From assembly GCF_033153115.1 (NCBI RefSeq), contig NW_026889758.1, positions 49,972,001 through 50,036,000 of the forward strand: a stretch of 64,000 bases of DNA. The letters run 5' to 3'. The notes under the pieces were generated by a model that saw nothing but the letters and a program-made list of their open reading frames with translations, made no database searches and was not told where the DNA came from. Below are positions 48,946-50,709 of this stretch, one piece after another. Position 1 is the stretch's first letter, and every line of letters starts with the position of its first letter. Origin of the DNA: Saccostrea echinata (taxonomy: Eukaryota). Made by a program: the position numbers and the translations under genes.

Positions 48946-50709
48946 ATGCGTGTAGCCATATTTTTTCTTGTGTTTGGAATAGTGCAGACTGCAATAAGTA
49001 AGGACGTTCTAGATCTCTATCGATACAAATATCAAGGAAATGTGAGTATTTTAGAATGTAAACACAATTCTTCTTTTTCTAATAAATTTCTGGACCATTG
49101 TGTATTTAATATACATATTTTTTTTAAAAAAAATGCAGTTTTAGGGTTTAAAAATCCCACTATTAATCTACCTTTTCTGTATCAAAAAAATGTATTATGT
49201 ATTCTGTAGTTGTAAGGATGTAGATAGAACAGATTTTATAAAGTTGTACGGAAATGTTATAATGACAAATAATGCCATCTTTGTCAGGGAATGTTTTATG
49301 AAGCTTCCCATGGAGGGACGTGCAGCTACGACCCTCCAAGCATGCCCCCGGCTGCACAGAACATTGATAGGACGATAGCAATCAATGCTGGTCAGTTTTA
49401 CAGAGGCTTTGCCTGTGGCGTCTGCTTCAGGGTATGTTTTGCGAAAAAAAAATGTCGTTTTTTGGGTTGGTTTGTTTGTTTGTTTTAACAAAATCATGCT
49501 GCTTTGTTAATTATTCGTTTGTCGAATTTCTTGTTTTGTGAATTTTCTACAGAAATCTCGTCCATTTTGTGCATTTTTTAAAATCATTAAAATCAAAACT
49601 TATTTTTATGGATAATAATTATCTTGAAAAAAGAAAACGATATACACATTATTAATATTAGGATTTCGCAAAATTCAATTAAAACTCAAATTTTGATTTC
49701 GTTATTTTGTCTTATGTCCATATTTCAGGTTAACATGTCGGGTAAATATAATGGAGGCTTGCCGATCGATGGGACATTTACAGTTTTCGTAAAGGATTTT
49801 TGTCCTAACTGTATGCCTGGTAAGACATTTTAGGAAAAATTTATTCGATTCCTTTCATATCTGGATAATTTGCTTGCATGCAGTGCACCGGTTACTTTCG
49901 ATTTTAGGGGTTCCCGCATTACCCGAAAACGTTGATGGATTGTTAGGAATGGAAATGCAGGCAATACAGTGTCCTGTAAGGAACTCAACGCTCGAGTACA
50001 AATTTCAAGGGAGTAGTCCGTATTACATTAAGCTTCAAGTCAGAAATGCAAGGTAAGTTTTAAAAATATATGTAACTATAAATAAAAGATGTTTGACCTT
50101 AATGAACACTTATTACATGGAAGATTTTATTAATGCGTTTGGTATATTATGAATTGCTACAGATGATTTTTTTTTAAATAAATAGATTTTTCTCATTTTC
50201 CCCCCAAATTTTTATTTAAAAAATGCATTGTTTAGCATTTTCATCATAAAATTAACCTATAAAATCTGGGTAGAATTCCTGCCAAAAGAGTAGAATTCTT
50301 TCAACCAAAGTGGCAACAATGGTCAACCCTTGCTCATACCCATGACGGTTTCTGGACATTTGGTGTGGATCCTATTGACAGACCTGTCAAGGCGCCTTTC
50401 CTCATTCGACTGACTGCAGCTAATGGAGAAAAAATCGTCGACTCAGTACCCGAATTAGGCAAGTATTTAATTACAAAAGATCTATATTTAGCTCTTTCTG
50501 TAGAATGTATTGAATATACTAGATATGTCTGATTCTGTTTTATTTAGTATTAGTAACATCATTTTGGGCTTGATTTATATTATCCTTAGATCCATTGATG
50601 TCGCTGATTTTTATTCCCAAAAAAAACTTATTTTTTTATTTCAGTAAATGGAGTTGTCTTGCAAGGCCAAGGAAAACAATTTGAATTTGATCCTAACTTA
50701 CCAAAGTAA
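48946..50709 (+). CDS. Expansin-like paralog 2 (secreted, 241 aa), lacking the conserved Thr and Asp
   Basis: Exons 48946-49041, 49288-49431, 49729-49819, 49908-50052, 50274-50458 (GC donor), 50645-50709; sizes 96/144/91/145/185/65 identical to 43427-46270; signal MRVAIFFLVFGIVQTAIS. Confidence 0.9.

What the first reader, a model, noticed from the sequence alone, without database searches (positions are those of the whole stretch)
49288..49960. Paralog 2 looks like a pseudo-expansin: both key polar residues replaced while the frame stays intact
Seen: GTYY becomes GMFY (ACC 43970 vs ATG 49291) and GSLDLA becomes GVPALP (GAC 44926 vs GCA 49916); GRWKI becomes GLLGM. The cysteines, all exon sizes and the CBM63-like half (EYKFQGS, YYIKLQVRNAR, DGFW, RLTAANGE) are retained. 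Established: the equivalent Asp82 of BsEXLX1 is required for wall extension and Thr12 lies in the same conserved polar site. Inference: an active/inactive tandem pair in which the second copy was kept as a glycan-binding protein, decoy or regulator.
Basis: partly seen in the sequence, partly recalled or inferred. Interest (0 to 1): 0.78.

Follow-up and report, generated by a model that had tools for sequence, protein, structure and literature searches.

The report
Oyster expansin copy lacking key residues
Oysters carry two neighbouring genes for a cellulose-loosening "expansin" protein, and the second copy has swapped the residues thought essential for loosening for greasy ones yet has been kept intact and expressed, much like the aspartate-less expansin relatives already known in plants.

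Summary
The window is Saccostrea echinata. It holds two tandem six-exon genes with identical exon sizes, matching XP_061174761.1 (copy 1) and XP_061174762.1 (copy 2), both 241 aa.

Copy 2 replaces the residues aligned to BsEXLX1 Thr12, Glu75 and Asp82 with Met, Asn and Ala. This is not private decay:
- Copy-2 orthologues in S. cucullata, Ostrea edulis and Magallana gigas/angulata carry Met/Ile, Asn and Ala/Leu.
- 83 of 83 other distinct homologues keep the Asp, and 80 of 83 keep the Thr.

Copy 2 is spliced at all five introns in transcript contigs, including a GC-AG intron. It shows third-position-biased divergence and folds as a two-domain expansin. Changes at deeply conserved sites are 12 of 44 in domain 1 against 1 of 32 in domain 2.

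Most likely it is a maintained binding protein without the Asp-dependent loosening site and with a remodelled domain 1. Its inactivity and any "decoy" role are untested.

Asp-less expansins are already known in plants and one bacterium, so this is a new member of a known kind.

The scan had noted copy 1 in this same window, not copy 2, and nothing on other DNA.

The parts
48946..49041 (+). Copy 2 (LOC133183888) exon 1: start codon, signal-peptide-like hydrophobic N-terminus and the LDLYRYKYQGN linker
   Evidence: The translation is residues 1-32 of P0106. It is spliced to exon 2 in an X1 contig, joint 49041/49288, GT..AG. The signal peptide is inferred from the sequence only.
49288..49431 (+). 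Copy 2 exon 2: start of domain 1. GMFY replaces GTYY. Met codon ATG at 49291-93 stands at the BsEXLX1 Thr12 position.
   Evidence: mapping. It is Met or Ile in all 15 copy-2-clade sequences that cover the site, against Thr in 80 of 83 others.
49729..49819 (+). Copy 2 exon 3: domain 1 strand with FVKDFCPNC. The Asp71 equivalent (D103) is kept; the Glu75 equivalent is Asn (N107).
   Evidence: Joints 49430/49728 and 49818/49907 appear in an X1 contig.
49908..50052 (+). Copy 2 exon 4: end of domain 1 (GVPALPENVDGLLGM), linker with the N136-S-T sequon, and start of domain 2 (EYKFQGSSPYYIKLQVRNA). Ala codon GCA at 49916-18 stands at the Asp82 position.
   Evidence: 73% nt identity to copy 1 exon 4 (family D5).
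50274..50458 (+). Copy 2 exon 5: core of domain 2 (CBM63-like), with DGFW and RLTAANGE. It is followed by a GC donor at 50459-60.
   Evidence: The joint 50456/50643 can shift by 2, which gives GC..AG. It is seen in contigs of runs X1 and X2.
50645..50709 (+). Copy 2 exon 6: C-terminal 21 residues and TAA stop (50707-09)
   Evidence: The X1 contig runs on to 50773, into the 3' UTR.
43427..46270 (+). Copy 1 (LOC133183887), the canonical paralogue. Exons: 43427-43522, 43967-44110, 44410-44500, 44918-45062, 45637-45821, 46206-46270. Thr codon ACC at 43970-72; Asp codon GAC at 44926-28.
   Evidence: The exon peptides are consecutive substrings of P0023 = XP_061174761.1. phmmer to expansin structures: 4jcw 2.7e-11, 2bh0 5e-9.

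Best explanation
Copy 2 (Saccostrea echinata LOC133183888, XP_061174762.1) is a real, expressed, selectively maintained paralogue of a molluscan microbial-type (EXLX-like) expansin.

Origin. It arose by tandem duplication before the Ostrea, Saccostrea and Magallana lineages split. It then went through a burst of change concentrated in domain 1, and has since been conserved.

What changed. The burst removed the polar pair that expansins need for wall loosening: the Thr12 equivalent became Met/Ile and the Asp82 equivalent became Ala/Leu. It also removed the Glu75 equivalent (now Asn) and put a Pro into the strand that carried the Asp.

What stayed. The double-psi beta-barrel scaffold, all six cysteines, the Asp71 equivalent and the whole domain-2 aromatic binding face are kept.

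Most likely function (inferred, not shown). The protein is secreted, docks on cellulose-like glucan through domain 2, and cannot perform the Asp-dependent loosening step. Its domain 1 serves a new, constrained function on a more hydrophobic surface. It would be the animal counterpart of the plant Asp-less expansins.
For: Gene model and identity:
- The six exon peptides are consecutive substrings of P0106, which NCBI lists as XP_061174762.1.
- Only two copies of the exon-5 peptide exist in the 923 Mb assembly.

Expression:
- Run X1 contigs with 0 to 3 differences are spliced at all five introns, including the GC-AG intron.
- A roughly 90%-identical contig of a related species (run X3) is spliced at intron 4.

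Age and sharing:
- Copy-2 orthologues exist in S. cucullata, O. edulis, M. gigas and M. angulata, each on the same contig as a copy-1 orthologue and mostly with consecutive identifiers.
- The copy-2 clade has 100/100 support on a stem of 0.94 changes per site, inside an oyster-only clade (95/97).
- The AU test does not reject monophyly of copy 1 (p = 0.333).

Residues:
- Asp is present in 83 of 83 distinct non-copy-2 homologues and 0 of 16 copy-2 sequences.
- Thr is present in 80 of 83 and 0 of 15.

Constraint:
- Of the 20 listed nucleotide differences between the window and the X3 contig in copy-2 exons 4-5, 17 are at third codon positions and none at second positions. 13 of 17 changed codons are synonymous.
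- Domain-2 identity between genera is the same for both copies (79-83% for copy 2, 73-82% for copy 1). Domain 1 of copy 2 is lower (75-81% against 87-91%) but far above the signal peptide (32-63%).

Domain asymmetry:
- At sites invariant in copy 1 and shared by at least 80% of 18 other molluscs, all copy-2 sequences differ at 12 of 44 sites in domain 1 and 1 of 32 in domain 2 (Fisher p = 0.0056).

Fold:
- AF2 mean pLDDT is 84.3 and pTM 0.81, with domain 2 at 93-96.
- The top 12 Foldseek PDB hits are all expansins (9ms5 1.5e-13; 3d30 3.7e-12, TM 0.76).

Binding face:
- Y149/Y150 (W125/W126 equivalents) and F185/W186 are kept in 16 of 16 copy-2 sequences.

Literature (passages read):
- Asp82 is required for creep and filter-paper weakening. 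D82A and D82N are inactive. Loosening depends on D1 and binding on D2. Thr12 and Asp82 form a conserved hydrogen bond (PMC5072189).
- Plant EXPA13 (Asp to Val) and EXPA20 (Asp to Glu) fail to complement, and EXLA/EXLB lack the Asp (bioRxiv 10.64898/2026.04.01.715922).
Against: - No assay of either oyster protein exists, so inactivity is inferred from bacterial and plant mutants only.
- The Asp71 equivalent is retained in all copy-2 sequences, so one groove acid remains.
- A natural bacterial expansin with Leu at the Asp82 position has been argued, without experiment, to keep an electronegative site and possibly activity (PMC5072189).
- The codon-position evidence covers only exons 4-5 (residue 114 onward), and only 20 of the 31 differences in that contig were listed. 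Selection on the domain-1 core therefore rests on protein identities alone.
- The lower pLDDT of domain 1 in copy 2 (56 at residues 31-40, 59 at 111-120, against 97-98 in copy 1) may only reflect an alignment dominated by canonical sequences.
- Neither copy reaches any Pfam gathering score.
- Run X1 is only guessed to be RNA; its RNA nature is inferred from the spliced contigs.
- No copy-2 protein was found for Crassostrea virginica, so it may be dispensable in some oysters.
Confidence: 0.6

Rival explanations
1. Copy 2 is still a wall- or fibre-loosening expansin. It would use a different mechanism or target: a hydrophobic domain-1 groove with the remaining Asp71-equivalent acid, acting on another dietary polymer such as algal glucans, mannans or chitin.
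For: - D103 (Asp71 equivalent) is kept in 16 of 16 copy-2 sequences.
- The new residues N32, F35, I62, G72, N107, V119 and M127 are invariant across three genera, as expected for a functional surface.
- The review raises the possibility of active expansins with a non-Asp residue (S. aurantiaca, Leu), still unverified.
- The fold is fully retained.
Against: - D82A and D82N abolish activity in BsEXLX1, and D82A in PcExl1, despite intact Asp71 (PMC5072189).
- Plant Asp-less EXPA13 and EXPA20 fail to complement.
- Copy 2 additionally loses the Thr12 partner and gains Pro113 in the Asp-bearing strand.
Confidence: 0.25
2. Copy 2 has left carbohydrate biology. Its fold would be reused as a secreted inhibitor, lectin-like immune protein or protein-binding module, with domain 2 conserved for structural reasons.
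For: - Double-psi beta-barrel domains serve non-glycan roles: the family profile also hits a papain inhibitor (5ntb, 4.7e-5), and Foldseek lists kiwellin weakly.
- The copy-2 clade gained a conserved N-x-S/T sequon at N136, absent from all five copy-1 proteins checked.
Against: - The aromatic residues of the domain-2 cellulose-binding face are unchanged in 16 of 16 sequences.
- Domain 2 evolves as slowly as in copy 1, which fits continued glycan binding.
- The gene stays next to copy 1 in four further oyster species.
Confidence: 0.12
3. Copy 2 is a decaying or functionless duplicate whose frame has survived by chance.
For: - It lost residues that are invariant elsewhere.
- It has a non-canonical GC splice donor.
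- Its contig depths in the same runs are lower than those of copy 1 (6.7-7.9 against 101 in X1). The tool itself says depth cannot rank genes.
- No C. virginica orthologue was found.
Against: - Intact 241-249 aa reading frames exist in three genera.
- It is correctly spliced at all five introns.
- 17 of 20 listed differences are at third codon positions.
- After a stem of 0.94, the path from S. echinata to the M. gigas orthologue is only 0.41 for copy 2, against 0.26 for copy 1.
Confidence: 0.03

Closest known systems
Bacillus subtilis EXLX1 (YoaJ) and other microbial expansins with solved structures (3d30/2bh0, 4jcw, 9ms5, 9ms4, 7wvr)
   Same: - The same two-domain fold: Foldseek E 1.5e-13 to 2.6e-11, TM 0.75-0.81.
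- The family profile hits 2bh0 at 2.2e-36.
- The domain-2 aromatic pair and the Asp71 equivalent are kept.
- A Cys stands at the Tyr73 position; the review says the Clavibacter expansin also has a Cys there.
   Different: - Copy 2 lacks the Thr12, Glu75 and Asp82 equivalents. It is a natural equivalent of the inactive D82A mutant with a second-site T12M change.
- It is an intron-rich animal gene with a signal-peptide-like N-terminus.
Plant Asp-less expansins: EXLA, EXLB, and EXPA clades VIII/IX (EXPA13 Asp to Val, EXPA20 Asp to Glu)
   Same: - They are ancient, conserved paralogues that lost the HFD/Asp82-equivalent Asp while keeping the two-domain fold.
- They fail to substitute for an active expansin (bioRxiv 10.64898/2026.04.01.715922, passages).
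- A GhEXLA1 structure (7xc8) is among the fold hits.
   Different: - The origin is independent. Copy 2 branches inside an oyster-only clade of molluscan EXLX-like proteins.
- The Thr partner is lost too, and both are replaced by hydrophobic residues.
- The setting is presumably digestive rather than cell growth (inference).
Stigmatella aurantiaca expansin YP_003956816 (Leu at the Asp82 position)
   Same: It is a natural expansin with Leu instead of the functional Asp, as in the Magallana copy-2 proteins. Its activity is unverified (PMC5072189).
   Different: It is bacterial. I did not see its sequence, so the other groove residues could not be compared. It is not known to be part of an active/Asp-less pair.
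Copy 1 in the same window (LOC133183887) and its orthologues annotated 'expansin-YoaJ(-like)' in oysters
   Same: - 57% identity over the mature protein (126 of 222).
- Identical exon sizes and phases.
- The same cysteines and domain-2 motifs.
   Different: - Copy 1 keeps all canonical groove residues.
- Copy 1 scores better against solved expansins (2.7e-11 against 6.6e-5).
- Copy 1 is modelled with pLDDT 94.6 against 84.3.

Membership tests
Expansin superfamily, microbial-type two-domain EXLX | Two tightly packed domains: an N-terminal double-psi beta-barrel (D1) and a C-terminal beta-sandwich (D2, CBM63) | tested here: met
   The AF2 model of P0106 has pLDDT 84.3 and pTM 0.81. The 12 best Foldseek PDB hits are all two-domain expansins, E 1.5e-13 to 8.3e-9.
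Expansin superfamily, microbial-type two-domain EXLX | Significant sequence similarity to experimentally characterised expansins | tested here: met
   phmmer of P0106: 9ms5 6.6e-5, 7wvr 9.8e-5, 2bh0 2.7e-4. The 75-sequence family profile: 9ms5 5.4e-49, 2bh0 2.2e-36.
Expansin superfamily, microbial-type two-domain EXLX | Pfam gathering score for DPBB_1 / EXPB1_D1 and Expansin_C | tested here: not met
   All hits are below cut-off for both copies and their orthologues (best 16.7 bits against 27; 16.1 against 24.6). The exon-by-exon scan gave the same. Canonical copy 1 fails as well, so this reflects model insensitivity rather than exclusion.
Expansin superfamily, microbial-type two-domain EXLX | Conserved D1 polar site (BsEXLX1 Thr12 and Asp82, with Asp71, Tyr73, Glu75) | tested here: not met
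   In copy 2, T12 is Met, E75 is Asn and D82 is Ala; D71 is kept; Y73 is Cys, as in all molluscan homologues. Copy 1 meets this feature.
Expansin superfamily, microbial-type two-domain EXLX | D2 aromatic platform for glucan binding (BsEXLX1 W125, W126, Y157) | tested here: met
   Y149/Y150 align to W125/W126. F185/W186 lie next to the Y157 column, where the alignment is uncertain by 1-2 residues. All are kept in 16 of 16 copy-2 sequences.
Expansin superfamily, microbial-type two-domain EXLX | Non-hydrolytic wall creep or filter-paper weakening | not testable with these tools
   This needs recombinant protein and an extensometer or tensile assay.
Plant expansin-like families EXLA/EXLB | Descent from the plant EXLA/EXLB clades | tested here: not met
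   Copy 2 sits within an oyster-only clade of molluscan proteins (95/97). The resemblance, loss of the Asp, is convergent.
Pseudogene | Disrupted frame, no correctly spliced transcript, neutral substitution pattern | tested here: not met
   The frame is intact in three genera. All five introns are spliced in contigs. 17 of 20 listed differences are at third codon positions.

The most novel reading that the evidence does not exclude
Oysters evolved, independently of plants, a dedicated Asp-less "pseudo-expansin" that works together with or against its active tandem neighbour in digesting algal cell walls. It might occupy or prime cellulose surfaces, or present a new hydrophobic domain-1 face to partner cellulases. 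If so, the pair would be a natural active/inactive system in an animal for dissecting how expansin domain 1 loosens cellulose.
Probability: 0.3. Interest if true: 0.55.

Novelty: new member of a known kind. Interest (0 to 1): 0.4.

Why it matters
How expansins loosen cellulose without hydrolysis is still unresolved, and animal expansins are almost unstudied. A 2019 survey (bioRxiv 10.1101/637728, passages read) still asked whether bivalve expansin genes were contamination.

Here both genes are intron-rich and chromosomal, sit in a conserved tandem arrangement, and are transcribed. That settles that they are oyster genes.

The pair is 57% identical, has the same exon structure, and differs sharply at the domain-1 groove. 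It offers a natural contrast for chimera and mutant experiments, and a third independent case, after plants and a myxobacterium, of an expansin kept without its key Asp.

The practical value is modest: understanding algal-wall digestion in farmed oysters and finding cellulase synergists.

Tried and rejected
- **Sigma-70 promoter and terminator scan upstream of copy 2.** It is meaningless for an animal gene and showed no enrichment (6 found against 5.7 expected). Discarded.
- **Pfam on single exons and on full proteins.** Only sub-threshold hits, so it was not useful for membership.
- **The search of protein representatives with the exon-5 peptide.** It returned 22 hits, mostly single-exon ORF fragments. 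Only P0009 and P0015 were full-length, and they served as scaffolds for the next search.
- **Exon-6 comparison.** It was made 2 nt out of frame for copy 2 and is void. It is corrected.
- **Compensating acid in copy 2.**
  - E37 is present in Saccostrea and Magallana but is Gly in O. edulis.
  - D120 is shared with copy 1 and with BsEXLX1 D96.
  - No clade-wide new acid at the groove was found, but without model coordinates I could not measure distances.
- **Contig depths as an expression ratio.** Rejected, because the tool states that depth cannot rank genes.
- **Paper searches:**
  - 'expansin' + 'oyster' returned mushroom papers.
  - A six-term search with min_terms 2 was unspecific.
  - 'expansin-YoaJ' gave 4 papers, none on oysters; the whelk one lists it as a bacterial read.
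  - Gene and protein identifiers of the M. gigas, C. virginica and O. edulis genes gave 0 papers.
  - 'expansin' + 'mollus' + 'cellulase' gave 15 papers, none on expansin paralogues as judged from titles and abstracts only; PMC6006793 mentions only nematode expansins.
  - I therefore found no paper describing this paralogue.
- **Codon-based dN/dS across orthologues.** It could not be run because no orthologous coding DNA could be fetched.
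Full report
**What is there**

Window 43.4-50.7 kb (+ strand) holds two tandem genes of six exons each. I defined the exons from three-frame translations and splice signals.
- Copy 1 exons: 43427-43522, 43967-44110, 44410-44500, 44918-45062, 45637-45821, 46206-46270.
- Copy 2 exons: 48946-49041, 49288-49431, 49729-49819, 49908-50052, 50274-50458, 50645-50709.

Exon lengths are 96/144/91/145/185/65 nt in both genes, with the same phases. All splice sites are GT-AG except copy 2 intron 5, which has a GC donor (with the exon-6 start corrected afterwards).

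Instead, database proteins returned by the searches were matched to the exons. Every exon peptide of copy 1 is a consecutive substring of P0023, and every exon peptide of copy 2 is a consecutive substring of P0106. Single-residue gaps occur only at the split codons.

NCBI names these proteins XP_061174761.1 (LOC133183887) and XP_061174762.1 (LOC133183888) of Saccostrea echinata, both "uncharacterized protein". The genome (923 Mb, 425 contigs) holds only these two matches to the exon-5 peptide.

**The observation**

The numbering claim was tested. phmmer aligns copy 1 to BsEXLX1 chain 2bh0_A (E = 5e-9) with T34=T12, Y36=T14, D103=D71, C105=Y73, E107=E75, D114=D82, D120=D96 and Y149/Y150=W125/W126.

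Copy 2 is colinear with copy 1 and has M34, N107 and A114. It also has P113 in the strand that carried the Asp.

The Clavibacter expansin pair 4jcw and 4js7 (the D78N mutant) aligns its Asp/Asn to the same column.

**Is it an expansin?**

- Pfam does not reach its gathering scores for either copy.
- Copy 2 hits solved expansins by sequence: 9ms5 6.6e-5 and 2bh0 2.7e-4.
- A 75-sequence family profile hits 9ms5 at 5.4e-49 and BsEXLX1 at 2.2e-36.
- The AF2 model of copy 2 has mean pLDDT 84.3 and pTM 0.81.
- Its 12 best Foldseek PDB matches are all two-domain expansins (bacterial, fungal and plant), with TM 0.75-0.81 for the nine bacterial and fungal chains and 0.61-0.63 for the three plant ones.
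- Copy 1 models at pLDDT 94.6 and pTM 0.89 from the same 75 sequences.
- The confidence dips in copy 2 lie at residues 31-40 (56) and 111-120 (59), which are the two remodelled motifs. Its domain 2 scores 93-96. This may partly reflect an alignment dominated by canonical sequences.

**Private decay or old and shared?**

A search with an alignment of two full-length molluscan homologues plus the separate exon peptides gave 85 proteins among 8000 scored candidates. They come from bivalves, gastropods and a chiton, plus metagenome proteins.

Cluster look-up and sequences show copy-2 orthologues in four further species:
- S. cucullata: two haplotype copies, plus a truncated 114-aa member;
- Ostrea edulis: LOC125650994;
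- Magallana gigas and M. angulata.

Each lies on the same contig as a copy-1 orthologue, mostly with consecutive identifiers. All of them lack the polar pair. Saccostrea and Ostrea have Met + Ala, and Magallana has Ile + Leu. All have Asn at the Glu75 position.

I aligned 99 distinct sequences of at least 185 aa:
- The Asp is present in 83 of 83 non-copy-2 sequences and 0 of 16 copy-2 sequences.
- The Thr is present in 80 of 83 non-copy-2 sequences. The exceptions are a Sinanodonta paralogue with Ser and two mis-modelled or fragmentary proteins (P0080, P0098).
- The Thr is present in 0 of the 15 copy-2 sequences that cover the site.
- The Glu75 and Asp71 columns are less strict elsewhere (Glu in 69 of 83; Asp in 62 of 83, with Asn in 20). 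Asn107 is therefore weaker evidence.
- D103 is kept in copy 2.

A direct search with P0106 found only three copy-2-type clusters, from Saccostrea, Ostrea and Magallana, among 21 hits. The Pinctada fragment is copy-1-like. No copy-2 protein of C. virginica appeared.

**Tree**

I built the tree from 55 of the 99 sequences. Near-identical cluster members, partial or mis-modelled proteins and a number of unnamed metagenome proteins were left out. The model was LG+C20+F+G4.
- Oyster copies 1 and 2 together form a clade (95/97).
- Copy 2 is a 100/100 clade on a stem of 0.94 changes per site.
- Paths within the copy-2 clade are only about 1.5 times those of copy 1: S. echinata to O. edulis is 0.31 against 0.21, and S. 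echinata to M. gigas is 0.41 against 0.26.
- The tree nests copy 2 within copy 1 with unstarred support. The AU test does not reject monophyly of copy 1 (p = 0.333).

Both copies are present in three genera. The simplest history is therefore one tandem duplication before those lineages split, followed by a burst of change and then constraint.

**Constraint and its distribution**

Between genera, domain 2 (residues 134-241) is as conserved in copy 2 as in copy 1: 79-83% against 73-82%. Domain 1 (residues 33-133) is less conserved in copy 2: 75-81% against 87-91%. It is still well above the signal peptide, at 32-63%.

I then took sites that are invariant in the six copy-1 proteins and shared by at least 80% of 18 other molluscan homologues that I chose. 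All five copy-2 proteins differ at 12 of 44 such sites in domain 1 and at 1 of 32 in domain 2 (Fisher p = 0.0056). One more such site (D32 to N) lies in the linker just before domain 1.

Seven of these positions carry a new residue that is invariant across the copy-2 clade: N32, F35, I62, G72, N107, V119 and M127.

At the nucleotide level, a contig of run X3 is about 90% identical to the window. Its four amino-acid changes match the S. cucullata protein. It differs from the window in copy-2 exons 4-5 at 20 listed positions. Of these, 17 are third codon positions and none second positions, and 13 of 17 changed codons are synonymous. This covers only residue 114 onward, and read laying listed only part of the 31 differences in that contig.

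**Expression**

Run X1 has two contigs that together cover copy 2. The tool labels the run "RNA?" as a guess.
- One contig of 386 nt has 0 differences and spans exons 1 to 4.
- One contig of 408 nt has 3 differences and spans exons 4 to 6 and runs into the 3' UTR.
- The joints are 49041/49288, 49430/49728, 49818/49907, 50050/50272 and 50456/50643.
- The last joint can shift by 2, giving GC..AG, and is also seen in run X2.

No intronless copy of exon 5 exists in the assembly, so these joined forms are best read as spliced RNA.

Depths are lower than for copy 1 (6.7-7.9 against 101 in X1). The tool warns that depth cannot rank genes, so I draw nothing from this.

**Mechanism**

According to the passages I read in the review PMC5072189:
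- D82A and D82N are inactive.
- Thr12 forms a conserved hydrogen bond with Asp82.
- Binding resides in D2 and loosening in D1.

Copy 2 keeps the D2 aromatic residues and loses the D1 pair. It equals BsEXLX1 D96, which coexists with D82 in proteins where D82A is inactive. It is also present in copy 1 and in 74 of 83 other homologues.

I therefore commit to this reading: a secreted, glucan-docking protein that cannot do the Asp-dependent loosening step, and whose domain 1 has a new, constrained and more hydrophobic surface (confidence 0.6).
- Shown: sequence, age, splicing, constraint and fold.
- Inferred: secretion, binding, lack of loosening and any partner or decoy role.

**Comparison and novelty**

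Asp-less expansins maintained over long times are already known. Passages of bioRxiv 10.64898/2026.04.01.715922 report that:
- plant EXLA and EXLB lack the Asp;
- EXPA13 has Val and EXPA20 has Glu at that site;
- these fail to complement an expa7/expa18 mutant.

A Stigmatella expansin has Leu at that position. The oyster copy is an independent animal instance and is already annotated as a gene. I rate it a new member of a known kind, with interest 0.4.

My paper searches found no description of it. Supplements were closed.

**Earlier notes of this scan**

The earlier notes concern copy 1 and an upstream cellulase-derived fragment in this same window. They told me the organism was a rock oyster and that copy 1 is annotated, and I confirmed both. 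They do not cover copy 2.

Noticed in passing
window 47665-47905 and 47870-48258: A minisatellite with a unit of about 21 nt, in two adjoining blocks of opposite orientation (7 and 15 copies), lies in the spacer between the two expansin genes.
   Followed up: no
window 50459-50460: Copy 2 intron 5 uses a GC donor (G|GCAAGT), where copy 1 has GT. The GC-AG joint is seen in contigs of runs X1 and X2.
   Followed up: yes
window 45036-45669 and 45817-50266: One contig of run X2 (organism B) joins copy-1 exons 4 and 5 by a non-canonical joint (CT..AC), then jumps from copy-1 exon 5 into copy-2 exon 5. It is either a chimeric assembly between paralogues or a hybrid gene in that organism.
   Followed up: no
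window 45248-45645 (copy 1 intron 4): Contig depths are very high in all three runs (up to 816 in X1), with many loose ends. This is probably an expressed repeat or transposon fragment inside the intron.
   Followed up: no
proteins P0124 and P0128 (Crassostrea virginica): C. virginica has two copy-1-type proteins, but no copy-2-type protein appeared in any search. This may be a loss, or a gene missing from the annotation.
   Followed up: partly
protein P0053 (Sinanodonta woodiana): A freshwater-mussel homologue on a long branch (1.35) has Ser at the Thr12 position and Asn at the Glu75 position but keeps the Asp. It may be a second, milder case of groove divergence.
   Followed up: no
copy 2 residue N136 (window about 49982-49990): An N-x-S/T glycosylation sequon in the D1-D2 linker is present in the four copy-2 proteins checked (NST, NST, NSS, NTT) and in none of the five copy-1 proteins checked.
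   Followed up: partly
proteins P0015, P0062, P0066 (chiton and gastropods): P0015 (350 aa, Liolophura) carries a Thr/Pro-rich, mucin-like C-terminal tail. P0062 and P0066 (343 and 363 aa) are similarly longer than the ~240-aa norm, but I did not inspect their sequences.
   Followed up: no
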